NCBI GenBank assembly: GCA_965655095.1
Contig: OZ296648.1
Location: 178,994,001-179,058,000, forward strand
DNA from: Haplodiscus bocki
Lineage: Eukaryota
DNA length: 64,000 nt
Direction: 5' to 3'
The notes below the pieces were generated by a model that saw only the letters and a list, made by a program, of their open reading frames with translations, had not been told where the DNA came from and did not search any database. Shown here one piece after another: positions 4,266 to 64,000 of this stretch. Within the stretch, counting starts at the first letter, position 1; every line of letters begins with the position of its first letter. A program made the position numbers and the translations under genes.

Positions 4266-4364
4266 AACGTCTTCTGTGGCTAATTTTGACCGCCATTAAC
4301 GCCCTTATACCGGAAAAATGTTGGCCATTATTTCGACCCGGGCGGTGTAATATTTTGGACTTAC

Positions 4365-4970: not shown

Positions 4971-5224
4971 TATTGTAAAACTATTAGTTCATTATATTAA
5001 ACTATTATTTTCCGTTGTAATTTATATTGCGAGAAAGGAAAATCTTTCTCTATGTAAGTTGATTTTTTTATCCGGAAATTTTCAATTGGGATCGAACATC
5101 AATCATCACGTTTTTTTAAAAGCCAAAATGTTTTTCTCGATACTTAGAAGGCAATTTTGACAACCTTGCCGAATAATAATTGCTCAAAGTCCAAGAAAAA
5201 CTACGAATACATAGTTTTTTTTGT

Positions 5225-5240
5225 TATATATAATTTATAT

Positions 5241-5271
<31 letters not shown>

Positions 5272-5276
5272 TATAT
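5225..5276. repeat. (TA)n / (TATATC)n microsatellite
   Basis: TATATATAATTTATATATATCTATATCTATATCTATATATATATATATATAT, at the boundary between unique DNA and satellite. Confidence 0.95.
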
Positions 5277-5299
5277 CCTTTTTTCTCGCTCACTGTTTC

Positions 5300-7970
5300 T
5301 CTGGATGAGTAGAATGAGGTTCTGAAAACCCTGCTGAAAACTTTTTGCGCGAACAAATTGGTGGTTTATTTCCTAATGTCGGGGCCCAAGTTGCCTGAAT
5401 TTTGCACTGGCGTAACGATGTGCTCTTTTCTTTGACACATTTAAATTTAATTGCTGATCGACATTCTTTTGATATTCTTTCCTGCAAAAAAACCACAAAA
5501 TTAATCTGTTTTGTTTTGTCAACTTGAATCACACTTTTTGTCATAGTATAAGTCAGGTTTCATCTACATTTAGGGCTCCAAACTGCCTGAATTTTGCTTG
5601 AGCTGTACGAAGAGTCTCTTCTTTTGTATCACACAATAAGATTTTTTACAGTCTAGAGCTTTTTTGGCAGTTTGTTTTCTGATAAAATTTTGAAAACTGA
5701 GCCACTTTCGGCCAGTTTAACGGTAGTTGTCACAATCTAGGTTGTGTAATTTTGCATTTAGGCAATCAAAACAAAACTGAATTTTTCACAAACTGAACAA
5801 ATAGCCTCTCATCTATGACACACTAAGCTATAGCGGTTGTCTGGATGTTTTTCGATAGCTTCGTTTGCAATGAAAACTCGAAAACCATGCTTGTTTTGAC
5901 CAATTTGTTGAGACGTGCCTTAATATAGGCGGTTTATATCTGCATGAAGAGCTTCAAAATGTCTGTACTTTAAACGGGCTAGACAAAAGATTCTGTTCTT
6001 TCATAGAGTGAAGCTAGTTCAGTCTGACACTTCTTTGATAGCTTTGTTACCAATAGAATCTCAAAAACTGAGCAATTTTTTGGCCAAATGGACCGATGTT
6101 GCAATAGATTGGTAGTTTTTTTTCCATTTGTGGGGCCTCCAGTTGCCTAAGGTTTGATCGCGTTGAACGCTGAAAAACTGGTTTTGTTTTGTTTTATTAC
6201 AAAAAAAATTCTGCCTGCAGTCCAACAGCATTTCGATAGTCATGTTTATGTTTTCGACAGAAGTATAAAAAGAGAACTACGTTTGGTCACTCACACAGAA
6301 TTTGCCAACTTGGAAACCTTTTCCTCCCGAGTGTACGTCTCGCAACTGCCTGATTTTGTACAAGTTCAAGAGATAGACACTGTTTTATCACCCACTACTT
6401 TTTCGTTGCTGTCTCACACTTTTTAAAAGCTTTGTTTGTGATAGAAACTTGAAAACAAAACTAACTTTCAACAAACGGGGGAAATAGCTTTTTCTAGCAC
6501 CTTTTCTTTTGCATGTAGGTTTTTGATTTGTCTACATTTTGCACAAGTTTAACGATGAGTACTTCAATTCGTACACTACACATTGATTGTAGTCTGGCGT
6601 TTTCTGGCAATTTTTCCGCGAAAAGCTAGCTAGTTTTGTCAATTGGGCACGCAATTTGTCACTACATAAGTATTTATTTTCATTCAGGACTTAAACTTGC
6701 CTGAAGATTGCACAAGCTGAATGAAGAGAATCAGTTCTGTCGCAAACTTTTTTTTAGTTCAGTTCGACATATCATCCACGTTTCTGTTGGCGATACAATC
6801 TCGAAAATCGAGCCCTTTTTCCGGCCAATTTGACAACAGTTGTCATAATAAAAGTCATTTATGTCTGAATGCCGGGCTCTAAACTGCCCGATTTTTGTGA
6901 AGTTTGAAAGACCAGACTAGCTTTCATCACAAAATATTTTCTGATTGCAGTCCGACAGTTTATCGAGAGTCTTGTTTGCGACAGAATCTTGGAAGTTGAG
7001 CCACCAATGGCCAATTTGATCAAATTTGCAACACTAAGGTTCCTTTTCTGCCAGACGTAGGTCTCCGAAAAACCCAACTTTTGCCCAAGTTTAACAAACA
7101 GAAAAAGTGTGTATCACAATTTAGGTTTTAGGTCTGGTTTGATTGTTTTAGACAGTTTTGTTTGCGACAGATTCTTGAAAACGGAGCCATTTTTCTGACC
7201 GATTCGTCAAGATTGCCATCAGAGTAGTTAGGTTTTTCTACCATTTGTGGGAACGCAAGTTGTCTTTGTCTGACTTCTGCACAGTTTTATCGAAGGGCGA
7301 TTTTCACTCGCTCATTCAACTTTACTTTTTGTCTGACACTTTCTCCATAGGTTTGTTTCCGATGGAAACTTTAAAACCGAGAATTTTTTGGCCAATTTGA
7401 CCTAAGTTGCCATATAACAGTTTCTTTTTTCCCGCATATAAGGTTCCAGTCTGCCTGAATTTTGATTGAACTTCAATTTCAAAGCCTTTCAATCACACAC
7501 TCAACTTTATTGTTGTTATAACACTTTGGCAGTAGCTCTCCTTCCGATAAAAACCTGAAAAGGAAGAAAATTTTGACAAGTTTGACTGAAGTTGTCAATT
7601 TACAGGTCGTTCATTTCCTCAGAAAGCGCTCCAATTTGCCTTTTTTGCTAAAACTCAACAAAAAACAAAAAATTAATCAATTAAACACTATTTTTAGGTG
7701 CATTCAAACAATTTTCCGACTGTTTGGTCTGCAATAGAATCCTGAAAGACGAAGCACTTCCTTGCAAATTGATCGAAGTTTCCCAATTAAAGGTCGTTTT
7801 GTTCCCCGAGTAGTCAGTTACACTGCTTGAACTTTGCTTAAGCTGAACAATCAGACTGTTTTTAGGATCAGAGTAAAAATCGGTTGACTGTGACAGATTT
7901 CCTTTAATTGCCATAGGACGTCAGGAACCGGACCATTTCCGGTCATTTCCACAAAAATTACTTTTTTTAA
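5300..7970 (+). repeat. Diverged ~180-190-bp satellite monomers (left old layer, about 14 monomers)
   Basis: A TTGCGATAGAATCTTGAAAA-like anchor occurs at ~5680, 5866, 6048, 6254, 6437, 6616, 6789, 6977, 7163, 7357, 7542, 7729 and 7905. A GGGCTCCAAACTGCCTGAATTTTGC-like box occurs at ~5381 and ~5573. Confidence 0.85.
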
Positions 7971-10900
7971 GTACTCCTCTCACCAGTGTAGCACTCGCAA
8001 CTGCCTGACATTTGCACAAGGCTAAGGAACAGGCACTGTTCTATCAAGAACTTTTTTGTTGCTGTCCGACAATTTACAAAAACTTTGTTTGCGATGAGCT
8101 TGAAAACCAAGCTAAACCTGGCCCTGCTGACAAAAACTGGCATTTCATTGCTCCTTCCTCTTTGAACGTGGCGCTCTGATTTCTGCTTGAAGCTTGCAAA
8201 AGCAAAATGTTGAGCATTTAGTTTCCACACACTGAAGATTGATCGTGGTCCACGGTCTTTCTGGCAGTTTTTGTCTGCGAAAAAAATTAAACGGCTAGCT
8301 AATGTTGTCATTTTGATACATAAATTGTCATTTTTAATTTTTTCCATGCAGGCCGTAAACTTCTTTGAATTTTGCAAAAGTTGAACGTTGAGACTCAACT
8401 CTATCGCGAACTACTTTTTGGTTCAGTCCGACAACTCTTTAAAAAAGTTTTTGGCGATAGATTTATGAGAACTGAACCAAAAATGACCAACTTGATCAAA
8501 ATAGGCTTTTGAATTGTTGGTTTTTGCACATGTAGGGTGCCAGAATACCTGAAATTTGCACTAACACAACAAAACGACTTTGTTCTGAGCTATGATAAGT
8601 TTTTTTGCACGACAGTTTTTCTAAGAATTGTTTGCGACAAAATCTTGGAATTCGAGCCAGTTATGGTCAATTCGACCGAAGTTGCAACAGTTTATTTTTT
8701 TCGTTGCTGCAATAAAGGCTCCAAAAGGCCTAAGTTTACGCGGCTAAGCAGGCATAATGGGTCTGATTACAATTTCTTTTGGGGAAACTCCGACAGTTTT
8801 CTTTGCGACAATATCCTAAAAACTGAGCCCTTTTTTGGCCGAGTTGACCAAAGTTGCATCGAAATGGGTTCACTTTTTCCGCATATAGGGTTCCACACTG
8901 TTTGAATTTTTTATAGGCCTAATCTTCATAGCTTCTCTTTTGCACACTTAACTTCATTCTTGGTCCATCACCTTTGCGATAGCTCTTTTTCCGATAGAAC
9001 GCTGAAAAGCAAACAAATTGTGCCGGCTTTGATTGAAATTGTTAATTTAAAGTCGCTTACATCTTTATGCAGATCTCCAACTTGCTTGTTTGTTGCAGAG
9101 GATGAACGACAAAAAAAGAGACTATGTTCTATCGAACACTACCTTTAGGTGTATTCTAACAGTTTCCCGAGGGTTTGTTCTGCAATAAAGTCTGAAAATT
9201 GAAGCAGTTTTGGCCAAACTGTGCGAAGTTGCCTCATTAAAGGTCATTTTTGTCCACAAGTAGTCATTCAAACTGCTTGATTTCCACACAGGCTCAACGA
9301 TTAAACTATTTTTAAGATCAGAGCGAAACTTGGTTCCTTCTGACAGATTTCTCTTTTTTTTGCGATACGCTTCAGAAACCGGACTACTTTCGGTCACTTC
9401 CACAAAGAATGCCTTTTTGTAGATACTCCTCTCCCAAGTATAGCAGTCGCAACTGCCTGACATTTGCACAAGGCTAAAGAACAAGCACTGTTCTATCAAG
9501 AACTTTTTTGTTGCTGTCCCACAATGTACAAAAACTTTGTTTGCGATGAGCTTGAAAACCAAGCCAAACCTGGCCCTGCTGACAAAAACTGGCATTTCAT
9601 TGCTCCTTCCTTTTTGCACGTGGCGCTCTGATTTTTGCTTGAAGCTTGCAAAAGCAAAGTGTTGAGCTTTTGCTCTCCACACACTGAAGATTGATCGTGG
9701 TCCGGGGTCTTTCTGAAGTTTTTGTTTGCGAAAAAATTTAAACGGCTGGCTAATGTTGTCAATTTGATACATAAATTGTCATTTTGTATTTTTTCCATGC
9801 AGGCCGTAAACTTCTTTGAATTTTGCAAAAGTTGAACGTTGAGACTCAACTCTATCGCAAACTACTTTTTGGTTCAGGCCGACAACACTTCGATAAAATT
9901 TTTGGCGATAGATTTATGAGAACTGAACCAAAAATGACCAACTTGATCAAAATAGGCCTTTGAATTGATAGTTTTTGCACACGTAAGGTGCCATACTACC
10001 TGAAATTTGCACTAATCTAGCAAAACGACTTTGTTCTGAGCTAAGATAGGTTTATTTTTGGCACGACATTTTTTCTAACAATTGTTTGCGACAGAATCTT
10101 GGAATTCGAGCCAGTTATGGTCAATTCGACCGAAGTTGCAGCAGTTTGTTTTTTTTCGTTGCTGCAATAACTGCTCCAAAAGGCCTAAGTTTACGCGGCT
10201 AAGCAGTCACATCGAGTCTGATTACAATTTCTGTTTGCGGAACACCGACAGTTTTCTTTGCGATAATGTCCTAAAAACTGAGCCCTTTTTTGGCCGAGTT
10301 GACCAAAGTTGCCTCGAAATGGGTTCAATATTTCCGCATATAGGGTTCCACACTGTTTGATTTTTATATAGGCCTAATCTTCATAGCCTCTCTATTGCAC
10401 ACTTAACTTCATTCTTGGTCCAAAACCTTTGCGATAGCTCTTTTTCCGATAGAACCCTGAAAAGCAAACAATTTTTGACCGCTTTGACTGAAATTGTTAA
10501 TTTAAAGGTCGTTTACATCATTATGCAGATCTCCCACTTGCTTGTTTCTTGCAGAGGCTATACGACAAAAAAAAAGAGACTATGTTCTATCGAACACTAC
10601 CTTTAGGTGTATTCTAACAGTTTCCCGAGGGTTTGTTCTGCAATAAAGTCTGAAAGTTGAAGCAGTTTTGGCCAAACTGTGCGAAGTTGCCTCATTAAAG
10701 GTCGTTTTTGTCCACAAGTAGTCATTCAAACTGCTTGATTTCCACACAGGCTCAACGATCAAACTATTTTTAAGATCAGAGCGAAACTTGGTTCCTTCTG
10801 ACAGATTTCTCTTTTTTTTGCGATACGCTTCAGAAACCGGACTACTTTCGGTCACTTCCACAAAGAATGCCTTTTTGTAGATACTCCTCTCCCAAGTATA

Positions 10901-48986: not shown

Positions 48987-50385
48987 TTCACAATCCTTTC
49001 CTGTTTGTATATACTTTTTCCCGAATATTGCTCTCGTAACTTCCTGACTTTCGCAAGATCTCAACGAGTATACATTCATCTATCACACACTTTTTCTATA
49101 TTTTCCAACTGTTTCCAAATTTTGTTTGCCATAGACGCTTGAAAACCCAGCTATACTGACATTTTCCACAGGATTGGTTTTTTTAACGCCTTTTTTCAGC
49201 ATTTGGGGCTCTGCTTTTGCCCAAAGTTTCCTTAGGCGTAAAATAGAGCACGCTTTTCCCCAAATTAAAAGGTGATCCAGGTGCGGCGCGTTTTTGGTAA
49301 TTTAAACGGGAAACCTTCAATATTTCTGCTGGTTTTGTCAATTTGACACATTATTTGCCTCTTTTTGTGCTATTTCTAGACGCAGGGCGTGAAGTTGCCT
49401 GAAGACTGAAGAGGTTGAAAGGAGAAACGCAATTCCATCACACGATTGTTTGGTTGAGTTCGACTACCCTTTGCTATGTTTAGTTCCGAGAGATTCTTGA
49501 AAACTGAGCCGCAATTGGCCAACTTGATCAAAATTGCAATTTTGCTGGTAGTTGTTTGAACAGAGAGGGCTCTAGAGCAATTAATTTTCGCAGAAGTTTA
49601 ATAAAGTGTTTCCATTCCGTGCTGTCTTTACTTTTAATTGTGGTACGACGGTTTTTCTAATGCATGCTTCTGACAGAGTCTTGAAAACCGAGTCTCTTGT
49701 TGCCAACTTGAGCAAAGTTGCCATAACGTAAGTCCTTTTGTTCTGCATGTAGGGTTCCAAACTGCCTGAATGTTGATTAGGCACATACTTCAAAACCTTG
49801 CAACGAGGAACTCAGTTTTCCGATAGAAACTTGAAAGGCAAGCTAATTTCGGCCAGTTTGACAAAGTTGGTCGTTTTACTGGTAATTAATATCCGCCTGA
49901 AGAGCTCCGAGTTGCCTAAATTTTGCAGAAGCTGAACGAAAAAAAAGTGGCTCTGTTAAATCCTACACTATTTTTGGACGCAGTCAAACAAATTTTTGAC
50001 TGTTTTGCCTGCAAAAGAGTCCTGAAACTTGAAGAACTTCTGTCCAAATTGATCAACGTTTCCTTAATATAATTCGTTTATGTCTACAAATAGCTATCAA
50101 AAATGCTTGCGTTTCGCAGAAGCTGAAAATAGAGACTCTTCTCTAGATTACTACAAAGATTGGTCCGGTTTAACAGATTTCTTCTTTTTGCGGTGAAATT
50201 TCAATAACCGGAGCACTTTGGTCACTTTCACATTTTTTTGCAGTTATTACACACTTTTGTCGCAAGTGTTCTATTCGCAACTGCCTGATTTTTACACAAA
50301 CTTAAAGAAAACACCATTTTAAAACACAAAGTTGCTTTTTTCCCCTACTGTTTTTCAAACTTTGTTTAACATAGACACTTGAAAA
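48987..50385 (+). repeat. Segment duplicated at ~52864-54262 (offset ~3.88 kb)
   Basis: TTCACAATCCTTTCCTGTTTGTAT...CCCGAATATTGCTCTCGTAACTTCCTGACTTTCGCAAGATCTCAACGAGTATACATTCATCTATCACACAC is nearly identical at both sites, and similarity continues for ~1.4 kb. Confidence 0.85.
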
Positions 50386-52217
50386 CCCAGCCAAGCTTGG
50401 ACTTTCGACAAGGTTGGTTTTGTAAAACGCCTTTCTTAATACATGTGGGGCTCTGCTTTTTTCCCTAAAACGTTCACACACGTAACGTTGAACGTTTCGT
50501 GCACAATCTAAACGTTGATCGATGTGCGGTGTGTCTTTTGTTGTTTCTCTGTGAAAAAAATTAAATCAGCTCTTTTTGTCAATTCAACACAAACTTTGCC
50601 CTAAAAAACGTTCTTTTATCAAGCAGCGCTTCAACTTTCTTTACAATTGCACAGGTTGAAGGAATAAACTCAATTCTATCGAACACTATTTTGTGGCTCA
50701 GTTGGACAATTCTTCGACATGTTCGTTCGCTATCGGTTCTTGAAAACTGAGACAAAATTAGCCAACTTGATCAGAGTTGTCATTTTTCGTGTACTTTTTT
50801 GCACATGAACTGCCGAATTCTGCAAAAATTCAGCAAAGAGTTTTTGTTCTGTGCTATGCTACTTTTATTTGTGGCACCATGGTTTTTCTATTAAAGATTC
50901 GCGACACAAACTTGAAAACTGAGCTTCTTTCGACCTATTTGAGCAAAAGTTGCCATTATATAGGTCATTTCCTTCAACTTAGAGTGTCTTTGTTTGCAAA
51001 TTCTTTGATAGGGTTTGAACAACAAAATGTCTCAAGGACATTTTCAGTTTTGATCTCATTTCAACACTTATGCGATAGCTACGTTTCCGATAGAAAACTG
51101 AAAAACAAATCAATTTCAGCCAGTTTGACTTTACTTGTCATTTTATTGGGCTTTTATAAACGCATGTGGAGCTCCAAGTTGCCTAGGGCTTTCAGACGCC
51201 AAGCGAGGAAAAAAGTGGTTTTGATCTATTCTACATTAAGGTTGGATGCAATTGAACTTTTTCGAACAGTTTTGTCTGCGAGAGACTTCTGAAAGCGGAG
51301 ACACTTCTGGCCGAATCGATCAAGGTTGCCTCACTTTAGTTCGTTTATATCTGCATGTAGCTATCGGAACTGCCTGAATTTTGCTCAAACGAAAAATAGA
51401 GACTCTTTTCTTGATTACACATAAAATCGGTTCAGTTCGACAGATCTCTTATTTGCATGAAAATTTAAAAACCCGACCACTTCGCTCACATGCACAATCT
51501 TCTCCTGTTTGTTTATTTTTTCGCCGGAGTGTTGCACTCTTAACTGCCTGACTGTCACACAGTGTTAAGGAACAGGTCTTGTTCTATCACATACTTTTTT
51601 AACTGCCCGACTTCTTTTCAAAACATTTTTTCGCGAAAGAAACTTGAAAGTCAAGCTAAACTTCACACTTTTGACAGAGTCAGTTTTTGGCGCTTCTTTC
51701 TGCATGCGGGGTTTTGAAAAATTTTGCCTAACAATTCCAGAAGCGTTTTGCTGTGCACCTATCTTCTCAGAAACTAGACACTGATTGTGGTCCGGCGTAG
51801 TTTTGGTAGTTGTTCTGCAATAAGTCCTTTTTTTCGAAAATTTGGTCACTTTGACACGAATATTGTTACTTTATAAGTTGTTTTTTTCATGCAAGGCCTA
51901 AACTTGACAGATGTTTGCGAATGTTGAACGAAGAGACTCACCTTTATCACACACCAACTCTGGTTCATTCCGACAAATATTTGGTGTTTTTGTTTGCGGT
52001 AGCTTCTTGAAAACTGAGCCGCAATAGACAAACTTGATCAAAGTTGCCATTTTGCTGGTACCTGTTTTGCACATGTAAGGCTCTAAACTACCTGAATTTC
52101 GCACAAGCCTAACAAAGTGTTTCACTTTCGTGATCATTTGACTTTTACTTGTGGTACGACGGTTTTTCTAATGCATGCTGGCTACAGAGTCTTAAAAACA
52201 GAGTCTCTTTCTGCCAA

Positions 52218-52522
52218 TTTGAACTACATTGCCATAAAGTAAGTGTTTTTGTGCTGCATAAAAGGTTCCAGACTGCCTGACTGTTGATTAGGCACAAACT
52301 TCAAAACCTTGCAACGACAAACTCAGTTTTCCGATAGGAACCTCAAAGGCAAGCCAATTTCGGCCAGTTTGAACTACATTGCCATAAAGTAAGTGTTTTT
52401 GTGCTGCATAAAAGGTTCCAGACTGCCTGACTGTTGATTAGGCACAAACTTCAAAACCTTGCAACGACAAACTCAGTTTTCCGATAGGAACCTCAAAGGC
52501 AAGCCAATTTCGGCCAGTTTGA
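52218..52522 (+). repeat. Perfect 150-bp tandem duplication
   Basis: GAACTACATTGCCATAAAGT starts at 52221 and again at 52371. The two copies read identically. Confidence 0.95.
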
Positions 52523-55099
52523 CAAAGTTGGTCATCTTACTGGCAATTAATATCCGCATGTAGAGCTCCAAGTTGTCTAAACTTTGCAGAGGCTAAACGA
52601 AGAAAAAACTCGCTGTTATATGCTACACTACGTTCAGATGCATTCGAACAGTTTCCTGACAGTTTTGTCTGCAAAAGAATCCTGAAAGTTGAAGTACTTC
52701 TGGCCAAATTGATCATTTATATCTACATGTAGCAAACGAAGTTGCCTCAGTTTTGCACAAGCTGAACAAAGAGATTTTTCTCTAGATCACACTAAAAATT
52801 CGTTCAGTCAGACAGATTTCTCCTGTGCACAAAAGTTCAAAAAATCGGACCATATCGCTTACTTTCACAATCCTTTCCTGTTTGTATTTACTTTTTCCCG
52901 AATATTGCTCTCGTAACTTCCTGACTTTCGCAAGATCTCAACGAGTATACATTCATCTATCACACACTTTTTCTTTATTCTCCAACTGCTTTCCAAATTT
53001 TGTTTGCCATAGACGCTTGAAAAACCAGCTATACTGACATTTTCCACAGGATTGGTTTTTTTAACGCCTTTTTTTCAGCATTTGGGGCTCTGCTTTTGCC
53101 CAAAGTTTCCTTAGGGGTAAAATAGAGCACGCTTTTCCCCAAATTAAAAGGTGATCCAGCTGCGGCGCGTTTTTGGTAATTTAAACGGGAAAGCTTCAAT
53201 TTTTCTGCTGGTTTTGTCAATTTGACACATTTTTTTCCCTCTTTCTATGTTGTTTTTCGACGCAGGGCATGAAGTTGCCTGAAGATTGAAGAGACTGAAC
53301 GAAGAGACGCAATTCCATCACACACCTGTTTCTTTCAATCCGAGAACGCTTTGCTATATTTCTTCCCCATAGATTCGTGACAACTGAGTCGCAATTGGCC
53401 AACTTGATCAAAGTTGTTGTTTTGCTGGTAGTTTCTCGAAAAATGAGGGCTCTAGACTACCTGAATTTGGCACAAATTTAACAAAGTACTTCAGTTCCCT
53501 GCTCTTCTGACTTTTATTTGTGGTACGACGGTTTCTCTAGTGCATGCTTCCAACAGAGTCTTGCAAACCGAGTCCGTTTTCGCCGGTTCGACCAAAGTTG
53601 CCATAACTTAAGTCATTTTATTCTGCATATAGGGTTCCAGACTGCCTGACTTTTGATTAGGCACAAACTTAAAAACCTTCTGAGGACCAACTCAGTTTTC
53701 GGATAGGTACCTCAGACGCAAGCTAAATTCGGCCAGTTTGACTAAGTTTGTCATTTTACTGGTCGTTTACATCCGAATGTAGAACTCCCAGTTGCCTGAT
53801 TTTTGCAGACGCTGAACAAAAAAAGTAGCTCTGTTAACTCCTAGAGTGGATTTATATGCAGTGAAACAATTTTTTGACAGTTTTATCTGCAATAGAATCC
53901 TGAAAGTTGGAGGAACTTTGGCCTAATTGATCAACGTTTCCTCAAAAGAATTCGTTTTTGTCTACACGTATCTATCGACATTGCCTGCGTTTCGCACAGG
54001 CTGAACAAAGAGACTCTTCTCTAGATTACTACGAAGATTGGTCCAGTTCAACAGAATTCTTCTTTTTGCAGTGAAATTTCAAAAACCGGAGCACTTTGGT
54101 CGCTTTCACAATTTTTTACAGTTAATATACACTTTTGTCGCGAGTGTTGTACTCGCAACTGCCTGACTTTTACACAAACTTAAAGAAAACACCATTTTAA
54201 AACACAATTTTGCTTTATTCCCCCACAGTTTTTCAAACTTTGTTTAACATAGAGACTTGAAATTTGCTCAACACAGAGACTCTTCTCATCATCACACCAA
54301 AAGTTGAGTCAGTTCGACAGATTTCACTTTTGCAGGAAAGTTTAGAAAAACGGACAGCTTCGCTCACTTGAACAATCTTCTCCTGTTTCTAAATACTTTT
54401 CCCCCTAGTATTGCACTCGTAACTGCCTGAATTCTGCACAATCTTTCTGAAAAGGCACTGATCTATCACACACTTGTTTTCACTCTAAGACTGTTTTTCA
54501 ATTTTTGTTTGCCAAAAAAACTTGGAAACCAAACAAAACTTGTCTTCTTTGACAAGGCTCTTATTCTAACGCCTTTCTTTCTGCATGTGGGGCTCTGGTT
54601 CACCCTAAGGCGTAACGCTGAGCACCTTTTTCCACAGATTAAGCATTGAATGAGGTCCGGTGTGTCTTTGATTGTTTTTCTGCAAAAAAAACCTAAAAAT
54701 TCGAAAATTTTCGTCATTTTGACACAAAACAGGACTCTTTATCTGTTGCTTTTCATGCGGGGTTTAAGCTTGCCTGAAGTTTGCACAGGCTATACGAAGA
54801 GATTTAATTCTATCAAACTTTTCTCTTGGTTCAATCCGACAACGCTTCGATATGTTTTTTCCCCGATAGGTTCTTGAAAACTGAGCCGCAATAGGCCAAC
54901 TTGATCATAGTTCCTTTTCGCTGGTTGTTTCTCGAAGAAATAGGGCTCTAGACTACCTGACTTTCCCACAAACCCAACAAACGTTTGTGTTCTGTGATCT
55001 GCTAACTATAAGTTCTCGTACGACGGATTTTCTATTGCATGTTTTTGAGAGAGTCTTGAAAACCAAGTGTCTTCTGGTCAATAACATAGGTCCTTTTCT

Positions 55100-57600
55100 C
55101 CCAGACTGCCTGATCTTTGGTTAGTCCTAAACTTCAAAAGCTTTTTTACTTTACATTCAAGTTCAGTATCAGTCCAACGTTTTTTCGATAGCTCTGTTAC
55201 CGATAAATACCTAGAAGGCTTGCTCATTTTGGCCACTTTGACTAAATTTGTCAATTTACAAGTCGTTTTTTCTCCAAAAAGGGCTCTAAGTTGCTTGAAT
55301 TTTCTAAAAAGTGAACACAAAAAGAAAAGACTCTGTTCTACCATGTACTATGTGTAGTTGCAGTTCGAACAATTTTTCTGAAGTTTCTGTCTGAAAGAGA
55401 ATACTGAAAGCCGAAACAATTCTGGCCAAATTATTCAAATTTACATCTTTCTAGTCCCCATGCAGTCATCCAAACTTCCTGTTTTTCACATATGCTGATG
55501 AAAGAGGCTTTTTTCTAGAACACAGCAAAGTTCGACTCAGTCCCACTGCTTTCACTTCCTCCGCAGAATAATTTTAAAAAATGGACCATTTTGATTACTT
55601 TCTCAAATTTTTCCTGTTTAGATAAACCTTTCTCCCGAGTGTTGCATTTGTGACTGCCTAAATTTTGCAAAAGCTTAAAGATCAGGCATTGTTTCATCAC
55701 ACACTTTCTCATTGTTCTCTTACAGTTTTTTTAAATCTTTGTCGTTTATAGAAAAGTGAATCCTAAGATAAATTGACTCCTTCGACGAGATTTGTTTCTT
55801 ATGACGATTTTAATTCTGCATGTGGGGCTCTGTTTCTTTCCCTGGAACTTTCACAAGCGTGACGCTGGGCACTTTTTTTTCAAATTATCAAATCTTCCAG
55901 GTCCATCGTGTTTTTGTTGACTTTTCTGTGAAAAAACTTCAATTGTTGCTCTTTTTTTCATCTTAACATGAAATTGGCCCCAATATATCTATTTTTATCA
56001 TGCATCGCTTCAATTTCCTTGACAATTTCACAGGCTGAACGAATAGACTCAAGTCTATCAAACACTACTCTTTGATTCAAGTGGACAATTCTTCGACTCT
56101 TTTTTTCGCTGTAGATTCTTGAAAACTGAGCTACAAATGGCCACTTTGACCAATGTAGATATTTTGTTTGTAGTTTTTTGCACAAGTAGGGCTCTGAATT
56201 ACCTGAATTCTGCATATATTCCACAAAAAGTTTCTGTTCTGTGCTTTGCTAACTATTGGTTGCGGTACGACAGTTTTTCTATTGAAGGTTTGCGACACAG
56301 TCTTGGAAATCGGGTCTCTTTTGTCCATATTGATCCAATTTGCTATGACTTAGATCCTTTTTACTTGGATCCTATTTTTCCACGTTGTTGGTTCTAGACT
56401 GCCTGATTTTTGATTAAATTTAAACTTCAAGAGCTTTTCTAATTCACATTCAGCTTTAGTATCGGTCCAACGCTTTTTCGATAGCTCTGTTTCTGATAGA
56501 AACCTAGAAAGCGCGCTCATTTTGGACAGTTTGACTAAATTTGTCAATTTACAAGTCGTTTTTCTCCCAAAAAGGGCTCTAAGTTGCCTGAATTTTCTAG
56601 AAAGTGGACAAAAAAAGAAAAAAATCTGTTCTAGCATGCACTATGTTTAGTTGCAGTTCGAAAACTTTTTCTCAAGTTTCTGTCTAAGAGAGAATCCTGA
56701 AAACCCAAATACTTCTAGCCAAATTATTCAAATTTACATCATTCTGGTCCCCATGTAGTCATTCAAACTACCTGATTTTCACATATGCTGATGAAAGAGG
56801 CTTTTTTCTAGAAAACAGCAAAGTTCGACTCAGTCCCACTGCTTTCACTTCCTCCGCAGAAGAATTTTAAAAATTCGACCATTTTGGTTAATTTCTCAAA
56901 ATTTTCCCGTTTAGATAAACCTTTCTCCGGAGTGTTGCACTTGTAACTGCCTAAATTTCGCCCAATTTTAAGGAATAGGCATTGTTTTATTACACACTTT
57001 CCCACATTTCTCCTACAGTTTTTTCAAAATTTTGTTTGTTATAGAAAATTGAAACCAAAGCTAAAATTGACTCTTTCGACGATATTTGTTTCAAATAACG
57101 ACTTTAATTTTGCATGTGGGGCTCTGTTCTTTTCCCTGGAACTTTCACAAGCGGGACGCTGGGCACTTCTTTTCTCAAATTATCAAATGTTCCATGTCCA
57201 TTGTGTTTTTGTTGATTTTTCTATAAAAAAAATTCAATTGTTGCTCTTTTTTTCATCTTAACACGAAATTGGCCCCAATATATCTATTTTTATCATGCAT
57301 CGCTTCATTTTCCTTGACAATTTCACAGGTTGAACGAATAGACTCAAGTCTATCAAACACTACTTTTTGGTTCAGTGCGACAAATCTTCGACATTTTCGT
57401 TCGCTATAGGTTCTTCACAACTGAGCCACAAATGGCAATTTTGATCCATGTTGATTTTTCGTTTGTAGTTTTTTGCACAAGTAGCGCTCCAGGCTACTTG
57501 AATTCTGCACAAGTTCCAAAAAGCGTTTCTGCTCTGTGCTTTGCTAACTTTTAGTTCTGGTAGGACGGCTTTTCTAGTGCATGTTGGCGACTGAGTCTTG
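55100..57600 (+). repeat. Tandem pair of closely related units at a 7-monomer offset (~1293 bp)
   Basis: CAGCAAAGTTCGACTCAGTCCCACTGCTTTCACTTCCTCCGCAGAA occurs at ~55523 and ~56816. Paired ORFs at 55515 and 56808 have the same offset. Confidence 0.85.
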
Positions 57601-59299
57601 AAAACGGAGTCAAGGTTTTCCCGATTTGCCACAGTTTCTCTTTTGTAGGTCGTTTTCTCCTCCACATAAGGAGCTCCAAGTTACTTGATTTCTGCAAAAG
57701 TTAAGCCAAGAGCCCTTCTTGTCTGACATTTAATTTTGCTTGCTGTCAGACACTTCTTCGACAGGTTTTATTGGATATAATTTGGGAAATTGAGCCTTTT
57801 TGCGGACATTTTGAGCGTAGCTGTCATAACATAGGTCTTTCAAGGCGCATATAGGATTCCAGACTGCCTGAATTTCAATTAAGCACCAAATTCAGAGCTT
57901 TTATACGCCACAATCACTTCAGTCGACGCTCAACACTACTTCGATAGCTCTATTTCCGATAGAAATTTGAAAATTAAGCTAAATTAAGCCATATTGACTA
58001 ACTTTGTCTTTTTACAAGGATGCCTATATCAGCATATAGAGATCCAGTTGCTTAAGTTTTGCAGAGGTTGAACGAAGAAAGAAGAGACTTTGTTTTAACA
58101 TTCACAGATTCAGTCGAACATTTCTACGACGGCTTTGTCCAAAATAGAATCCTGAAAGCCGAACCACTATTAGCCAAATTTGTCAAAGTTGCCTCGTTTT
58201 AGGCCATTTATATCCCCATGTAAACATCCAAACTGATTGAATTTCACACAGGCTGAACGAAGAAAATTATTTTCCTGATCAATCTAAATTGCTGTTCAGT
58301 TCGATTGATTTCTTGCCTTTGCAAAAAAGCTTTGAAAACCGGTTAGTTCCTGGTCACTTTCACTAATTCTTCTTTCCTAAAAACTTTCCTACCGAGTGTG
58401 GCACTCTCAGTTGCCTGACTTCCGCAAAAGGTCAAACAACACTCATAGTTCTTTCACCCACTTTTTGGCTGCTGCTCGACAGTTTTTTTGCAACTTTGTT
58501 CGCGATAGAAACTTGATAACCAAGCTGAACCTGGCCCTCTTGACAAAATTGGGTTCTTATGGTGCCCTTTTTTTGCACGCGGAGCTCTGATTTTTGCCTG
58601 AAGTTTGCACAAGCGTAACAGTGAGATCTTTTCTTTCGGAAAATAAACAATGAGCTTGGTCCGGCGCTTTTTTGGTAGTTTTTTTGCGTTTAAGTTTTTT
58701 TCTCCTCAAGTAAGGCTTATGATAGGGTGTTTGAATTTTGCACACCTCTATTAGAAAGACCATTCGGGGAAAGAAAGGCCAGTTTGACAAAACGTCTCAC
58801 TTTCAGGTTGTTTTCAAATGCATGAAAGGCTGTATTATGCCTGTTTTTCGCAGAGGCTCAATAGAGAGTTTCTTTTCTCCCACACTAAAGTTTGTTTCTT
58901 ATCCGACGTTTTTTTTGGTGTTTTTGATGTAGAATTAACAATAAAATTGAATTTTTCTGACCAATTCTACCAGAAATCTCATAACATTTATCGTCCAATA
59001 CTTTTTCAACAGGTTTGTTTTTGATAAGAGCTTTAAAACCGAGCCTGTTTTTGGCCAATTTAACAAAGTTGTCATAACATGGGTGCTTTTTTCCCACATA
59101 GGGTTCCAAGCTGCCTGGATTTTGATAAGTCTTAAACCAGACACTTCATATGCTGCAATCAAACTTAGTATCGGTCCATAACTTTCTCGATAATTCTGCT
59201 TCAGATAAAAATTTGAAAAGCGAGCTAAATTTTGTCAGTTTTCATGTAACAGGTCGTTTTTGTCCGGATGAAGCTCTCCAAGTTTCTCGAAGTTTACAC

Positions 59300-62200
59300 A
59301 GGCTGAACGGAGGAAATCCCTTCCTTAGCTTGTTCTTTTTGTAGGCGTCCTGACACTTTTTCGAGATTTTTGTTTGTGACAGAGTCTTTTATAGCTAAAT
59401 CGAGCCTTTTTTGGCCAAATGCCCCAAAAATTTCATAACACTGATCGTTTGGTTCATCATCTGGGGCTGAAAAAAAAACAAAACTCTTCACAGGATCGTT
59501 GATAGCGCATTTCATCACACACTAAACTGTAAAATTAATAAAGGGCTTTTCTGCTGTTTTTACTGCAAATTTCGAATTGAATTTGTGACTGGGGTTATAC
59601 CTTTTCTCAAAATTCATTTGTTTCTCTCCATGTAGTGCTCCAACTGGCCCAAACTTTTCACGGACAGAGCAAAAAGTTTAAGTTTTGCGATACTGATTCT
59701 TTAGGTGCAGTACAATAAGTCTTCGCTTGCGTGGTCTGCTTGCTTAATGCTTTAATGGTCTGCTTGCGATACAATTCAGGAAACCGAAAGCTATTTTTTG
59801 CTACTTTGAGGAAAGTTTCCATTTTGTAGGTAGTTTTTGTGAGCATTTATTTTTCTAATCTGCTTGAGTTTCAGATAGGCTCCTTAAAAAGACTCTTTCT
59901 ACCAACACAACTATCTTTCCATTTTGTTCCCATTTCTCTTTGAGGTTTTTTGTGCGAAAAAAATTTGAGAACGCAGATACTTTGGGCCAATTTTGCAAGA
60001 ATGATCAATACATAGGTCGTTCAATATCGCATATAGGGCTCTTGCCGCGCATAGGGCGCAAGTTGAACAAAGAGATTCTTTTCTAGCTCCTACCAAGACT
60101 CGGTTCAGTCCGACAGATTCCTTTTTTTGCAAAAAATTTCAAAAACCGGGCCACTTTTGTTCACCTGCTTAAAATTTGCCTTTCTATGAAAACTTTTTTT
60201 TTCAAGTGTAGCACTCGCAACTGCCTTCTGAAAAAATTGGCTATTAATACTCTCTTTCTTTCTGCATGTGATGCTCTGATTTTTGCCGAATTGTTGCACA
60301 AGCTTAACATTAAGCACCTTTTTTTCAGAAACTTAACATTGATCGTGGTCTTGCTCGTTTGTGGTAGTTTATCAGCGAGAAGACAAATAATATTTCCTAA
60401 CTTTAGTAAGTTTGACAGAAAGATTGTCGCTTCGCATGTTTTGTAATCATGCAGGCTGTACACTTGCGTGACGGTTGCACAAGCTGAACGAAGAGAATCA
60501 ATTCTATCACACATCGGTTTTTTTGGTTAAGTTCGACAATTCTTCGATATATTTATTAGCGATGGATTCTTGCAAACGGAGCCACAAACATCTACCACTT
60601 AAATGTTCTCTTTTGCACGTTTAAGGCTCCAAAGCGCCTCAGCTTCGCACGAGCTCAACAAAGAGTTTTTTTCTGAAATTTTCACACAGCCTGAACAAAC
60701 ACACTGCTCTATCACACAATTTTTTTCAGCTACGGTCCGACATTTTGCAAAGGTTTGCTTGCGATAGAAACTGGACAATAAAGCCAAATTCGTCCAATTT
60801 GATCAAAGTTGCCATACTGCGGGTCCTTTGTTTCCTTACCTATCTCTCCGAATTGACAAAGTCTTCACAAGCTTAATCTTGAGTGCTTCTCTACTTGATT
60901 ACTAACTTTGGTTATGTATTGACATTTTCTGGATGTTTCTTTGGCAAAAGAAAACGAAAACTCGAGCCATTGTTGTCAAAATGAATAAAAAATTTAAAGT
61001 ATTGTAGCATTTTACTTCATCATGGGAGGCTCCAAATTGTCAATTCTTTCAACAAATTCCCGAAAAATTTTTTTTTCGCCGCTCAAGGTGATTTGGTTGC
61101 AGTCATATAGCTATCAATGGTCTCGATTGCGATAGAATCTTGAAAAAAGATCCACTTTCGTCCAAGATGAATAAAGTTGCAGTAATAGAAGTCCTGATTT
61201 TTCTGCTTGCCATGCTCCAGATTGCCAGATGTTTGCACATTGTAACGACCAATTTCTGTTCTATCACATACTGATTGTTGGTTGCAGTCCGACTTTTCAA
61301 ACAAAGTTTTTATATAGGACAGAATATCGAAAACAGAATTAAAGGATTAAAAATGTTCTGGATGTATAAGGGATGTTTGTAAGTGCATGTGGGGCTGCGA
61401 TATGCCTTGATTTTGCACGAATTGTACAAAATCATAATCCTGAACTACACACTAGAATTTGGTTGCGATTCGGTGATTTGTACATAGCTCTTTTTGCAAC
61501 AAAACTAGGCAAACAAAATAAGTTTTGGTCAATTTTAACAAACTTCTTCTTATAAAGGTTGTTTATATCTGCATGTAACGCTGCATCCGACTAGCCTAAG
61601 TTTTACACAGGCCAGGCGAGCGGATTTTGCTCTTTCACAAACTAAAATTCTGTTGAGTCGAACAATTTTTCGAAAGTGTCGTTTCCGATTAAATCTTGCA
61701 AATGGAGACACATTTGGTCACTGTGATAAAAATCATTGAGCTGTAGGTCCCTTTTCCTCCATGTAAGGCTCCACACTGGCCGAACTTTGGGTTTTTTTAT
61801 GGGAGCTTTTTTGTCACTCAGTAAACTTTGGGTGTGATATGACAGTTTCTGATGTTTTTCTTGCAAAAAAAATTTGGAAACCGAGCCAGTTTTGGTCCGA
61901 AATTTTTTCATATCATTGAATGCTCCTTTTCTAATATTGAGTTCCAAGTATCCGAAGTTTACACAGGCGTGACGAAGCGACTCTCTTCTGTTACATACCG
62001 AAATTTGTTTAGTTTTGACACCTTTTGGATAGTTCTTCTGTGCCAAAAGCACTTGAAAGTCGAGCTTGTTCTGGTCAGTTTGAACAAATATCATTTTTAA
62101 TGGTCATCTTTTTCCACATGGAGGGCTCCAACTGGTGTGGTTTTAACACAAGTTTAACGAAGAAACTCTTTTCCTGTCGACACCAAAATTCAGTTCAGTC

Positions 62201-64000
62201 CGACAGATTTTCCCTTTCTTTTGGGAAAAAAATTCAAAAACCAAACCACTTTCAACCAAACCACACAAGCTTAAAAAACAAATGCTGTTCTGTCACGCAA
62301 GGTTTTTTCACTGCTGTCCGACACCATTAAAATTCAGGTAGGTTTGTTGCTTTAGAAACGGGAGTCGCCTTTTTATAGGTTTTTTACCATTGCGTGCTCC
62401 AAGATCCCCAAGAAAGTCACAAGCTCAACAAGGAAACTCTGTTTTTGCATGTACTTGACACATTTTTGGTTGCTGTTCTACACTTTTTCGACTATATTTT
62501 TTGCGATAGAATCTTGAAAACCAGGCAACTTTGTGGTACTTAGACAAAAACTCTCAAAAATAATTTTTTCGCCGCGTTTAGGGCTCCGAATTGACCGATG
62601 CTTTCACAGTGATAATGATGAGGGCTTTTCTATCACTCAAAAACATTTAATTATGATCTAAGTTTCTTTGATGTTCTTTTTTGTGAAAGATACTTCGGAA
62701 TCGAGCAAAAAATTGTCAACTTAGACAGGAATTCGTCCTTAAATTAGGATTTTTTGCCAGACGCTGGGCTCCAAATATTCTATTATCTTCACGGGTTTAA
62801 AAAAAGACTCTGGTTTTTAGCAAGAAAGTTTTCTTGATTTCGGACCCAAAACCGTTCGATAGTTTTTTTCGCGATAGAGACTTGAAAAAAGTGTACCTTT
62901 GGCCAATTTAAACAACGTTTTCACAGTATAGGTCTTCTCTATTTGCCCAAAAAGGTCTGCATTTCACCTGCATTCAGGATAGACTGAACGAAGAAACTAT
63001 GTTGTATTAGACACTAGTTTTTGGTTGCTGTTCAATATTTTTTTTGCTTCATTTGTTCGCGATATCGAACCGCAAACCGATCGATCTCGATTCAAATAAA
63101 CCCTTCCTTTTTTGTTCATCTTGAGAAAAGTTGCCTTGACATAGGTTTTTTTCTGCATCTATGGCTTCAAACTGCCTCAAATTTGCACAGGTTATTCAAT
63201 TCTAGCAGAAACCAAATTTCAGGTCAGACTCACGGTTTTACGGTTGTTTTGTTTGCAATGGAAAATCAAAACCTAGATAGCTTAGGTCAATTCAGAAAAG
63301 CTTGTCTTTTCCCAATTCGTTTGTATATTCATGTAGCGCTCCAAAGATTATTAGTTTTTGCTCGGGTTGATTGTTGAGCGCTTCTATATTATGCAGTACA
63401 TGTTGATTGTGAGTGATCCGAGCTTCTATAGTTTTTTCTCGAAAAGAGTTTTGAGAATCGATCTAATTGTGTCAATTTGGACACGAAATTTATCAACGTA
63501 TGGTTACTTTTGCTCAAGCGGGTCTACAATGGGGCCAATATTTGCTTGAAGTAGAGAGAGTGTGATATCACGCTCTAAATTTTGATTCCGGTTCGACATC
63601 TTGTCGGTAGTTTGATTTCAGCAGAAACTTGAACATCCAGCCAGTTTTGCTCATATCAATCAAAATTATCACAATATAAGTCCTTGGTATCGCATATGAA
63701 GCTGCCAATTGCCCTAATTCTGCATAGGTTCAGTCTTGAACCCGAAGCGATGATCAACTTTAGAGCACTTTGGCCAAAAGTTTCATATTGCAGGTTTATT
63801 TTTCCGCAAAAACAGCTGCAAACTGCAAATTTTTTCCGGAGATTTCGGGAAGAAAAAAGTTTATATCACACGCCGCAATTTAGTTCAATTGGAAACTTTT
63901 TTGACAGTTTTGTTTGCGATAAAATCTTGGCCACCAAAATATTTTTGGCCCCTTCGAGCGATGTTGTATTGATAAAGTCCGTTGTTATCTACCTGTAGGG
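59300..64000 (+). repeat. Highly diverged monomeric satellite (oldest layer), continuing past the right edge
   Basis: Residual TGCGATAGAA(T/A)CT-like anchors occur at ~60760, 61129, 62503, 62871 and 63916, with GGGCTCC(A/G)A boxes. No clear HOR periodicity is visible by eye. Confidence 0.75.

What the first reader, a model, noticed from the sequence alone, without database searches (positions are those of the whole stretch)
5300..64000. Alpha-satellite-style layered architecture in a different ~180-bp satellite: candidate centromeric or pericentromeric HOR domain
Seen: the 1457-bp macro-repeat is an 8-mer of strongly diverged ~182-bp monomers, while whole units are nearly identical. It sits among progressively more decayed copies of the same family in one orientation (old layer | young 8-mer HOR | old 7/8-mer HOR | monomeric). 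Known: nucleosome-sized monomers, HORs and age-graded flanking layers are hallmarks of primate centromeres (layered expansion). Inference: this may be an independently evolved HOR system. The core is small (36 kb), so it could be a nascent, relic or dispersed (holocentric-type) unit rather than a conventional centromere.
Basis: partly seen in the sequence, partly recalled or inferred. Interest (0 to 1): 0.85.

Follow-up and report, generated by a model that had tools for sequence, protein, structure and literature searches.

The report
Coral satellite with eight-monomer repeats
A 63-kb stretch of non-coding tandem DNA in an animal (reportedly coral) genome is built like human centromere repeats, with a young block of 25 near-copies of an eight-piece unit sitting inside much older copies, but nothing yet shows that it acts as a centromere.

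Summary
Window 5371-64000, continuing to about 68.5 kb in the parent contig, is a one-orientation, non-coding satellite of ~182-bp monomers.

- **Core:** 7988-44480 holds 25 copies of a 1457-bp unit. Each unit is an 8-mer of monomers only ~50% alike. Whole units are 95.2% alike (91.5-99.8), so "nearly identical" is overstated.
- **Clades:** all eight position-specific monomer clades are exactly monophyletic (support 0.94-1.0).
- **Flanks:** they keep the same monomer order at ~66% identity; the right flank is mostly a 7-mer lacking monomer 3. Beyond them lie monomers that cannot be typed.
- **Origin:** the young block starts and ends at almost the same phase, in register with the old units. 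That fits in-situ amplification of one old unit by unequal exchange, followed by 1-, 2- and 6-unit duplications.
- **Rivals:** I found no coding, RNA-gene, Helitron-joint or telomeric-palindrome signal.

The centromere role is untested and, on balance, not favoured:
- The young HOR looks confined to this locus.
- A prominin-like exon lies 0.8 kb away.
- The genome holds many unrelated 30-60-kb arrays.
- Corals are monocentric, so the holocentric reading is unlikely.

The scan had already found similar ~172-175-bp 8-mer HOR satellites on other pieces of this genome. This is a new member of a known kind.

The parts
5225..5276 (.). (TA)n microsatellite about 95 bp before the first satellite monomer; marks the left edge of the domain
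   Evidence: TRF; first monomer hit at 5371
5371..6310 (+). Outer-left layer (L0): five ~182-bp monomers of the family with no assignable HOR position
   Evidence: nhmmer hits E 1e-11 to 1e-26. Type scores nearly tie. Same-type identity to young monomers is 55.7% against 53.3% for different types
6326..7988 (+). Left old HOR layer (L1): one decayed unit in the order 7-8-1-2-3-(?)-4-5-6, in register with the young array
   Evidence: Type string. About 0.75 identity to the young consensus in 40-bp bins, collinear. Covered by one independent 2451-bp contig (5568-8018) with 0 differences at single-copy depth
7988..44480 (+). Young HOR array: 25.05 periods of the 1457-bp 8-mer unit (monomers T1-T8). 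It begins at consensus phase ~1100 and ends at phase ~1181
   Evidence: Mean pairwise identity 95.2%. u6-u8 differ by 3-5 substitutions
20000..21452 (+). Reference unit u9. Monomer starts in the consensus are at 181 (T2), 365 (T3), 537 (T4), 722 (T5), 914 (T6), 1094 (T7), 1276 (T8) and 1454 (T1, wrapping)
21453..34560 (+). Nested multi-unit duplications inside the young array: u10-12 resemble u16-18 (6-unit lag) and u11-12 resemble u13-14 (2-unit lag)
   Evidence: Identity matrix. Lag peaks at 2913, 5824 and 8740. Difference counts of 12-36 per unit
44480..58687 (+). Right old HOR layer (R1): about ten decayed units in the order 1-2-(3)-4-5-6-7-8. They are ~66% like the young types and like each other
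47711..57081 (+). Sub-block of R1 made of 7-mer units lacking monomer 3 (period about 1240-1490). The ~200-bp stretches after T7 that the HMM missed are, in most units, degenerate T8 monomers
   Evidence: Type string. Gap analysis. Lags of 1228-1394
58820..64000 (+). Outer-right monomeric layer (R2): family monomers without HOR order. It continues beyond the window to about 68,518 in contig coordinates
   Evidence: same-type 56.6% against different-type 51.7%. Extension (type ties, only 1 self-hit)
4361..4555 (-). Context only: prominin-like exon (TM1 plus cysteine-rich segment) about 0.8 kb from the satellite edge
   Evidence: Pfam PF05478, E = 0.004, 15.7 bits (below the 34.3 cut-off), profile positions 94-151 of 799

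Best explanation
This is a non-coding satellite DNA domain of about 63 kb made of ~182-bp monomers.

Its history, read from the layers, is as follows:
1. A monomeric array formed first. It now survives only as untypable monomers at both edges.
2. An eight-monomer block was then amplified as a unit, giving the old HOR array, now ~66% alike. Within it, a deletion variant lacking monomer 3 spread as a 7-mer.
3. Much later, one single 8-mer unit of that decayed array was amplified in place to 25 copies.
4. Further unequal exchanges of 1, 2 and 6 units followed. The latest is a triplet differing by 3-5 bases.

The engine is out-of-register recombination or replication between neighbouring repeats, that is, unequal sister-chromatid exchange or tandem segmental duplication. 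No sequence-specific machinery is needed.

The structure and order of events are shown. The recombination mechanism is inferred.

Functionally, I think it is most likely one of several locus-specific, selectively near-neutral arrays of an old satellite family in this genome, rather than the kinetochore-bearing centromere core. A short box, ATGTAGGGCTCCAAAT, that stays conserved in the oldest monomers hints that some factor may bind the family.
For: **Periodicities and significance:**

**Perfect 8-type string and monophyletic type clades:**. Old-layer monomers nest in the same type clades, so the HOR predates the old layer.

**Three identity classes** (95 / ~66 / ~56% same-type against ~51% different-type). 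From these numbers the JC distance is about 0.05 for the young layer and about 0.44 for the old layer, roughly a nine-fold age ratio.

**Junctions:** identity jumps from 0.75 to 0.97 at 7988 (phase ~1100) and falls from 0.95 to 0.70 at 44480 (phase ~1181). Both junctions are collinear with the old units.

**Ongoing local exchange:**
- Adjacent units are more alike than distant ones (96.1 vs 94.9%, permutation p < 0.0002).
- Three sub-variants are interleaved along the array, treeness 0.31.
- Multi-unit lags appear.

**Non-coding:**
- Variation shows no codon-phase bias (347/334/342).
- The recurrent 170-235-aa ORF has no Pfam match.
- It has no relatives outside this contig.

**Against a centromere core:**
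- The young HOR has a contig depth about 15-40 times the single-copy level.
- A prominin-like exon lies 0.8 kb away.
- Both domain edges are now known, giving 63 kb in total.

**Conserved box:** 0.79 observed against 0.62 +/- 0.025 in a neutral simulation; the maximum over 1000 simulations was 0.76.
Against: - No chromatin, cytological or expression data could be obtained, so 'not the centromere' is a judgement rather than a result.
- Depth from contigs is explicitly not a copy number.
- Functional centromere domains of a few tens of kb do exist in other animals (my own knowledge).
- Similar HOR arrays on other pieces of the genome would also fit one chromosome-specific HOR per centromere.
- The conserved-box test is inflated by alignment anchoring and by shared ancestry among neighbouring monomers.
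- Unequal exchange cannot be told apart from homologous re-integration of an extrachromosomal concatemer on these data.
Confidence: 0.68

Rival explanations
1. It is the DNA of a functional regional centromere or its immediate pericentromere. The young, more homogeneous HOR carries CENP-A nucleosomes, and new units expand in the middle while older layers are pushed outwards, as in primate alpha satellite. Related chromosome-specific HORs would mark the other centromeres.
For: - Nucleosome-sized monomers, a HOR, and a young core between older layers of the same family in one orientation.
- Earlier notes report similar ~172-175-bp 8-mer and other layered HOR arrays on other pieces of this genome (not checked by me).
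- Chromosome-specific centromeric FISH markers exist in stony corals (PMC12355185 and PMC9005458).
- A box stays conserved in the oldest monomers.
- No centromeric DNA has been defined for any cnidarian in the papers I could search.
Against: - Units are only ~95% alike.
- The array is 36 kb, and the domain is 63 kb with both edges defined.
- A gene-like exon lies 0.8 kb from the edge.
- The layers are strongly asymmetric.
- Earlier notes say many unrelated arrays of similar size exist in the genome.
- The only sequenced coral centromeric marker I could read, MA-13C, is unrelated.
- Nothing links this locus to a primary constriction.
Confidence: 0.2
2. The young block did not grow by unequal exchange. 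Instead a 1457-bp unit was excised as a circle, copied by rolling-circle replication, and the concatemer re-integrated by homologous recombination into its own source unit.
For: - The block starts and ends at nearly the same phase and is in register with its flanks, which a homologous re-integration would also give.
- Most unit pairs are 94-96% alike.
- Earlier notes say the genome is rich in rolling-circle elements.
Against: - The unit tree is not star-like (treeness 0.31). It has three interleaved sub-variants and many shared variants; the minor-allele spectrum has a long tail.
- Identity decays with distance.
- Multi-unit duplications of different ages are present.
- All of this needs repeated local events in any case.
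Confidence: 0.08
3. The array derives from a mobile element or an RNA gene. Candidates are a Helitron-like chain, a transposon-borne internal tandem repeat, or a decayed tRNA or snoRNA gene array, all of which earlier notes report elsewhere in this genome.
For: - Earlier notes describe Helitron-like head-to-tail chains, a ~164-bp tRNA-Ile array and a U14 array in the same genome.
- An abundant dispersed repeat flanks the domain on both sides.
- The ancestral monomer carries a 10-nt dyad.
Against: - ARAGORN finds no tRNA.
- Rfam gives no hit at gathering score, and only chance-level hits at E up to 5 with no recurring monomer phase.
- The Helitron joint motif is absent (1 near-match against 2.2 expected).
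- The monomer HMM finds nothing in either flank.
- There is no protein signal.
- The dyad is not maintained by compensatory change (39 compensated against 388 one-sided changes).
Confidence: 0.03
4. The array, or its copy number and internal order, is an assembly artefact.
For: Long tandem arrays are error-prone in assemblies. The second assembly that matches this one may rest on the same reads.
Against: - The window is 100% identical to an ENA contig over 3493-24170 and 51642-64000.
- Short-read-derived contigs from two samples reproduce the left flank, the old layer and the old/young junction without differences.
- Units carry enough private variants, about 5%, to be ordered uniquely.
Confidence: 0.02

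Closest known systems
Primate alpha satellite (171-bp monomers, chromosome-specific HORs, layered centromeres)
   Same: - Nucleosome-sized monomers.
- Multi-monomer HOR units far more alike than the monomers within them.
- Position-specific monomer clades.
- A young homogeneous block flanked by older HOR and then monomeric layers of one family.
- Growth by unequal exchange.
   Different: - There is no evidence of sequence relationship, and the host is a non-bilaterian animal.
- Monomers within the unit are ~50% alike, against roughly 60-80% in alpha satellite.
- Units are 95% alike, against typically above 97-99% in active human arrays.
- The array is 36 kb rather than megabases.
- The flanks are strongly asymmetric.
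- The old layer keeps the same HOR order, so the HOR itself is ancient.
- No CENP-A or CENP-B data exist.

The alpha-satellite figures come from my own knowledge and from the abstracts listed.
HOR satellites outside primates (for example maize CentC/knob repeats, PMC13011684; mouse minor satellite, PMC12583555)
   Same: These show that HOR organisation arises independently in many lineages through the same recombination dynamics. This array is another such case.
   Different: It comes from a different lineage (reportedly a coral), with a different monomer and a much smaller array. Unlike those cases, its link to a centromere or knob is unknown.
Porites 188-nt intergenic satellite with a palindromic telomeric sequence (PMC10236652)
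   Same: It is a coral satellite of similar monomer length (188 against 172-192 nt), tandemly repeated in intergenic regions. The most conserved box here, GTAGGGCTCCAA, matches TTAGGGCCCTAA at 9 of 12 positions.
   Different: The defining interstitial telomeric stretch is absent. The best match to (TTAGGG)4 or its complement anywhere in 72 kb is 62%, against the paper's 75% criterion, and the 12-nt palindrome is not enriched. The published consensus is only in a figure, so no direct alignment was possible.
Complex or macro-satellites with cryptic internal sub-repeats (kilobase units built from old diverged sub-units)
   Same: In practice the evolving unit is the 1457-bp block. The 182-bp periodicity is detectable only by sensitive alignment; TRF misses it.
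   Different: Here the sub-units are nucleosome-sized, all eight are still recognisable, and a monomeric outer layer of the same family survives beside the array.

Membership tests
Satellite DNA with higher-order repeat organisation | Head-to-tail tandem monomers of one family in one orientation | tested here: met
   313 + 27 nhmmer hits, all on the + strand, covering 0.7-0.98 of the sequence from 5371 to about 68518
Satellite DNA with higher-order repeat organisation | Units far more alike than the monomers inside a unit | tested here: met
   Same-position monomers are 95.0% alike and different positions 50.4%. Units are 95.2% alike
Satellite DNA with higher-order repeat organisation | Position-specific monomer clades and a fixed monomer order | tested here: met
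   Eight exactly monophyletic clades, support 0.94-1.0. The type string is 12345678 x 25
Satellite DNA with higher-order repeat organisation | Non-coding | tested here: met
   No codon-phase bias, no Pfam match, no Rfam or tRNA match
Functional centromeric satellite | Bound by the centromeric histone (CENP-A/cenH3) | not testable with these tools
   No chromatin data. The runs found are DNA contigs from one study only
Functional centromeric satellite | Located at the primary constriction, one domain per chromosome | not testable with these tools
   The window's position in its chromosome is unknown. Other arrays are known only from unchecked notes
Functional centromeric satellite | Gene-poor, repeat-rich surroundings | tested here: inconclusive
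   An abundant dispersed repeat lies on both sides, but a weak prominin-like exon lies 0.8 kb from the edge
Primate alpha satellite | Sequence homology to the 171-bp alpha monomer | not tested
   No alpha-satellite reference was available in the tools. The resemblance is architectural only
Porites 188-nt palindromic-ITS satellite | Contains a palindromic interstitial telomeric sequence detectable with (TTAGGG)4 at 75% identity or more | tested here: not met
   The best match is 15 of 24 (62%) anywhere in 72 kb. The 12-nt palindrome occurs 2 times against 1.1 expected
Porites 188-nt palindromic-ITS satellite | Sequence similarity to the published consensus | not testable with these tools
   The consensus is only in Figure S11, which is not held as text
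   1 near-match against 2.2 expected, and not at a unit joint. I tested only the one motif that a note quoted
RNA-gene-derived tandem arrays (tRNA, snoRNA) | Monomer matches an RNA family model | tested here: not met
   ARAGORN finds 0. Rfam gives 0 at gathering score, and only isolated chance-level hits at E up to 5

The most novel reading that the evidence does not exclude
The ~182-bp family is the centromeric satellite of this cnidarian. On this reading each chromosome carries its own ancient HOR (8-mers and relatives seen on other pieces of the genome), the young 36-kb block is the current kinetochore site, and the box ATGTAGGGCTCCAAAT conserved in the oldest monomers is a binding site for a centromere protein. 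This would be the first sequence-defined centromere in a non-bilaterian animal, and it would show that alpha-satellite-like layered HOR evolution is not tied to large mammalian centromeres.
Probability: 0.15. Interest if true: 0.75.

Novelty: new member of a known kind. Interest (0 to 1): 0.38.

Why it matters
HOR satellites are textbook for primates and are now known in plants, rodents and insects. I found no description of one, or of any centromeric DNA, for a cnidarian in the papers I could search.

This locus is small enough to be fully assembled with both edges. It therefore preserves an unusually complete in-situ record: a monomeric stage, then an old 8-mer, then a 7-mer deletion variant, then re-amplification of one old unit. 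That record can serve as a clean test case for models of satellite birth and turnover.

The locus also gives a concrete probe for asking where coral centromeres are, namely the 1457-bp unit and the conserved box. If it is not centromeric, it is an ordinary intergenic satellite of interest mainly to repeat specialists.

Tried and rejected
- **TRF:** with its 500-bp period limit it missed both periodicities.
- **First tiling script:** it included a 40-bp self-overlap and gave meaningless scores. It was fixed.
- **First identity metric:** its lax gap costs gave 66% identity for shuffled sequences as well, so I discarded it and replaced it.
- **Coding reading:** rejected.
- **RNA-gene origin:** rejected.
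- **Helitron-chain reading:** rejected for the one joint motif available.
- **Maintained hairpin or cruciform:**
  - The consensus dyad TTCTATCGCA...TGCGATAGAA is real: 51-55% complementarity in register against 15-40% when slid.
  - It is not kept by compensation.
  - The exact dyad occurs only twice.
  - Fold z-scores are inconsistent across monomer types. The first fold script timed out.
- **Family-wide exact patterns for collection scans:** none is feasible because the monomers are too diverged.
- **Metagenome scan:** a 24-mer of the young HOR is absent from metagenome contigs.
- **Notes look-ups by sequence and relatives:** blank.
- **Walking along the parent contig:**
  - The called genes to the right of the window contain in-frame stops, and I did not use them.
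  - To the left, two guessed ORFs are not on record.
- **Micromussa centromeric marker MA-13C:** unrelated.
- **Porites telomeric-palindrome satellite:** its defining feature is not met.
- **Organism name:** it stayed coded. 'Coral' rests on earlier unchecked notes.
Full report
**Observation**

The window has no N runs. Its 12-mer lag histogram is dominated by 1455-1460 and multiples of that value: 2913, 4369, 5824, 8740 and 17485. BLAST of one unit finds 25 collinear + strand copies between 8343 and 44541. It also finds collinear copies at 64-79% identity on both sides. Units are 1451-1460 bp long. Pairwise identity runs from 92% to about 100%, with a mean of 95.2%.

TRF, limited to 500-bp periods, sees none of this.

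**The 182-bp sub-period**

Base autocorrelation shows only a weak bump at lags 180-185, so I used alignment instead. I took 180-bp tiles of the unit consensus and aligned each against the rest of the unit. Every tile finds its best match at 0.98-6.99 times 182 bp, always close to an integer. Mean score is 52.8, against 26.9 +/- 1.4 for dinucleotide shuffles (one search had a bug).

A profile built from eight equal slices recovers eight monomers of 172-192 bp. Under strict scoring they match each other at 45-57%, against 41 +/- 3% for shuffles. On profile columns the figure is 50%. The unit is therefore a real but very old 8-mer.

**Extent and orientation**

The monomer profile finds 313 hits in the window. 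All are on the + strand, running from 5371 to 63977, and there are none in 1-5300.

A protein search with a recurrent ORF hit only proteins of one 167,407-bp ENA contig. That contig contains the window at 100% identity. It gave me 8 kb beyond the window. The satellite continues on the + strand to about 68,518 and then stops, and the last 3.6 kb have no hit. The whole domain is therefore about 63.1 kb, with both edges known.

**Position-specific clades and layers**

Assigning each monomer to the best of the eight types gives a perfect 12345678 x 25 string in the core. In a tree of 302 monomers, each of the eight young types is exactly monophyletic, with support of 0.94-1.0. Old-layer monomers fall into the same eight super-clades, so the 8-mer order is older than the old layer.

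| Layer | Coordinates | Content |
|---|---|---|
| L0 | 5371-6310 | untypable monomers |
| L1 | 6326-7988 | one decayed unit, order 7-8-1-2-3-?-4-5-6 |
| Young | 7988-44480 | 25 copies of the 8-mer unit |
| R1 | 44480-58687 | about ten decayed units, order 1-2-(3)-4-5-6-7-8 |
| R2 | 58.8 to ~68.5 kb | type scores tie; no local higher-order period |

In the middle of R1 (47.7-57.1 kb) the units lack monomer 3. The ~200-bp stretches after T7 that the profile missed are mostly degenerate T8 monomers: seven of the eight such gaps match T8 best and one matches T6.

Same-type against different-type identity:

| Comparison | Same type | Different type |
|---|---|---|
| Young vs young | 95.0% | 50.4% |
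| Young vs L1 | 65.8% | 52.1% |
| Young vs R1 | 65.5% | 50.7% |
| R1 vs R1 | 66.8% | 50.7% |
| Young vs R2 | 56.6% | 51.7% |
| Young vs L0 | 55.7% | 53.3% |

The ages therefore fall into three discrete classes. From these figures the Jukes-Cantor distance is about 0.05 among young units and about 0.44 among old ones, roughly a nine-fold difference. That ratio is my own arithmetic.

**How the young block arose**

In 40-bp bins against the young consensus, identity jumps from about 0.75 to 0.97 at 7988, which is consensus phase ~1100. It falls from about 0.95 to 0.70 at 44480, which is phase ~1181. The flanks stay collinear with the consensus across both junctions. The block is thus 25.05 periods long, begins and ends at almost the same phase, and sits in register inside the old array.

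This is what in-place amplification of one old unit predicts. It is not what insertion from elsewhere predicts.

Later history is visible inside the block:
- Adjacent units are more alike than distant ones (96.1 vs 94.9%, permutation p < 0.0002).
- u6, u7 and u8 differ by 3-5 substitutions.
- u10-12 pair with u16-18, and u11-12 pair with u13-14.
- The unit tree has three sub-variants interleaved along the array, with treeness 0.31 and many shared variants.

These features favour repeated unequal exchanges of one to six units over a single rolling-circle burst. The recombination mechanism itself is inferred, not shown.

**Independent support for the assembly**

Contigs built from public runs of two samples reproduce the unique flank and the old left layer. 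One 2451-bp contig covers 5568-8018 with no differences, at about the depth of the flank (20 against ~16).

Bins inside the young array sum to roughly 264-668 in one run. The tool warns that this is not a copy number. Taken loosely, it is what the 25 local copies alone would give, so I see no sign of large arrays of this HOR elsewhere.

**Rivals tested**

- **Coding.** A 170-235-aa ORF recurs on the minus strand, but its ends vary. Variation shows no codon-phase bias (347/334/342). It has no Pfam match and no relatives outside this contig.
- **RNA-gene array.** Earlier notes report tRNA-Ile and U14 arrays in this genome. Here ARAGORN finds nothing. Rfam finds nothing at gathering score, and only isolated chance-level hits at E up to 5.
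- **Helitron-like chain.** Earlier notes report such chains. The quoted joint motif is absent, and the monomer profile finds nothing in either flank.
- **Porites 188-nt satellite with a palindromic telomeric sequence** (PMC10236652). By the paper's own (TTAGGG)4 criterion, nothing in 72 kb qualifies; the best match is 62%. The 12-nt palindrome is not enriched. The published consensus is only in a figure, so deeper kinship remains open.
- **Micromussa centromeric FISH marker MA-13C.** It is unrelated.

**Sequence features of the monomer**

- **Dyad.** The family consensus carries a 10-nt dyad, TTCTATCGCA and TGCGATAGAA, about 44 nt apart. In-register complementarity is 51-55%, against 15-40% when slid. 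Old monomers show 39 compensated against 388 one-sided changes, and fold z-scores differ widely between types. I read the dyad as an ancestral relic.
- **Conserved box.** A de novo alignment of the 41 outermost monomers has its most conserved window at ATGTAGGGCTCCAAAT. The observed value is 0.79, against 0.62 +/- 0.025 at that site and a maximum of 0.76 over 1000 neutral, composition-biased star-decay simulations. Alignment anchoring and shared ancestry inflate this test, so it is a hint of constraint and no more.

**Centromere question**

In favour:
- The architecture resembles centromeric HOR arrays.
- Similar arrays are noted on other pieces of the genome (not checked by me).
- Chromosome-specific centromeric markers exist in stony corals.
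- I found no described cnidarian centromere DNA.

Against:
- Unit identity is only 95%.
- The array is 36 kb and the domain 63 kb.
- The young HOR appears to be locus-specific.
- The layers are asymmetric.
- A weak prominin-like exon lies 0.8 kb from the edge (PF05478, E = 0.004).
- Many unrelated 28-60-kb arrays are reported in this genome.

Coral karyotypes are monocentric, which makes the holocentric-type reading unlikely if the 'coral' label from earlier notes is right. I put the centromere reading at about 0.2.

**Comparison and verdict**

The locus works like other HOR satellites and meets every structural criterion of that kind. It is not shown to be a member of any named family.

It differs from alpha satellite in four ways:
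- The monomers are far more diverged.
- The HOR order is ancient.
- The array is small.
- The flanks are asymmetric.

HORs outside primates are well documented (for example PMC13011684 and PMC12583555), and this scan has already confirmed similar 8-mer satellites elsewhere in this genome. I therefore class it as a new member of a known kind, of moderate interest. Its value lies mainly in being a complete, assembled record of satellite layering and a concrete probe for locating coral centromeres.

Noticed in passing
window 3999-4264 (also 925-1067 and 1744-1886, inverted): The 31-bp minisatellite (consensus CGCCGCTATTTTTCCGGTTAAACGCCGTTAA, 8.7 copies) belongs to an extremely abundant repeat. 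Summed contig depth is 1.4-7.8 million, against about 16-30 for the unique flank. The 3000-4000 stretch is also at 1e4-1e5.
   Followed up: partly
window 1-3750: A complex repeat unrelated to the satellite: ~343-372-bp units in two blocks of opposite orientation (for example 297-424 against 2398-2525, 76-79% complementary), interleaved with the 31-bp minisatellite. It looks like a large palindromic transposon-like structure. A 68% match to 951-1120 also lies just beyond the right edge of the satellite domain.
   Followed up: no
window 4361-4555, minus strand: A 64-aa ORF with a transmembrane stretch followed by a cysteine-rich run gives a weak Prominin match (PF05478, E = 0.004, profile 94-151/799). 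It is a probable isolated exon about 0.8 kb from the satellite.
   Followed up: partly
window 52208-52522: A recent 150-bp tandem duplication (2.1 copies, 98-99% identical) lies inside the old HOR layer, splitting a T4-like monomer.
   Followed up: no
window 48986-50384 vs 52863-54262: Within the otherwise ~66%-alike old layer, one three-unit-lag pair is 86.5% identical, and 54262-56309 against 55490-57604 is 76.7%. The old layer therefore had intermediate-age duplications of its own.
   Followed up: partly
young units, consensus positions 1-1457: Variation among the 24 full units falls steadily along the unit, from 0.94 minor alleles per site in the first ~180 bp to 0.45 in the last. CpG sites are not more variable than other sites (0.59 vs 0.71), and transitions do not exceed transversions (193 vs 221). 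This is unexplained.
   Followed up: no
L002:448-741, 892-1203, 1858-2295, 3815-3997: Genes called on the public contig just right of the satellite contain in-frame stops under table 11, so the caller probably used another code or they are spurious. I did not use them.
   Followed up: no
not in the window: PMC12355185, supplementary file 4: The 111-bp Micromussa marker MA-13C, which FISH-maps to one centromere, contains GACCACACCACAG. This resembles the GACCACC/YAG joint that earlier notes give for Helitron-like chains in this genome. It is a lead that coral centromeric signals might come from such chains.
   Followed up: no
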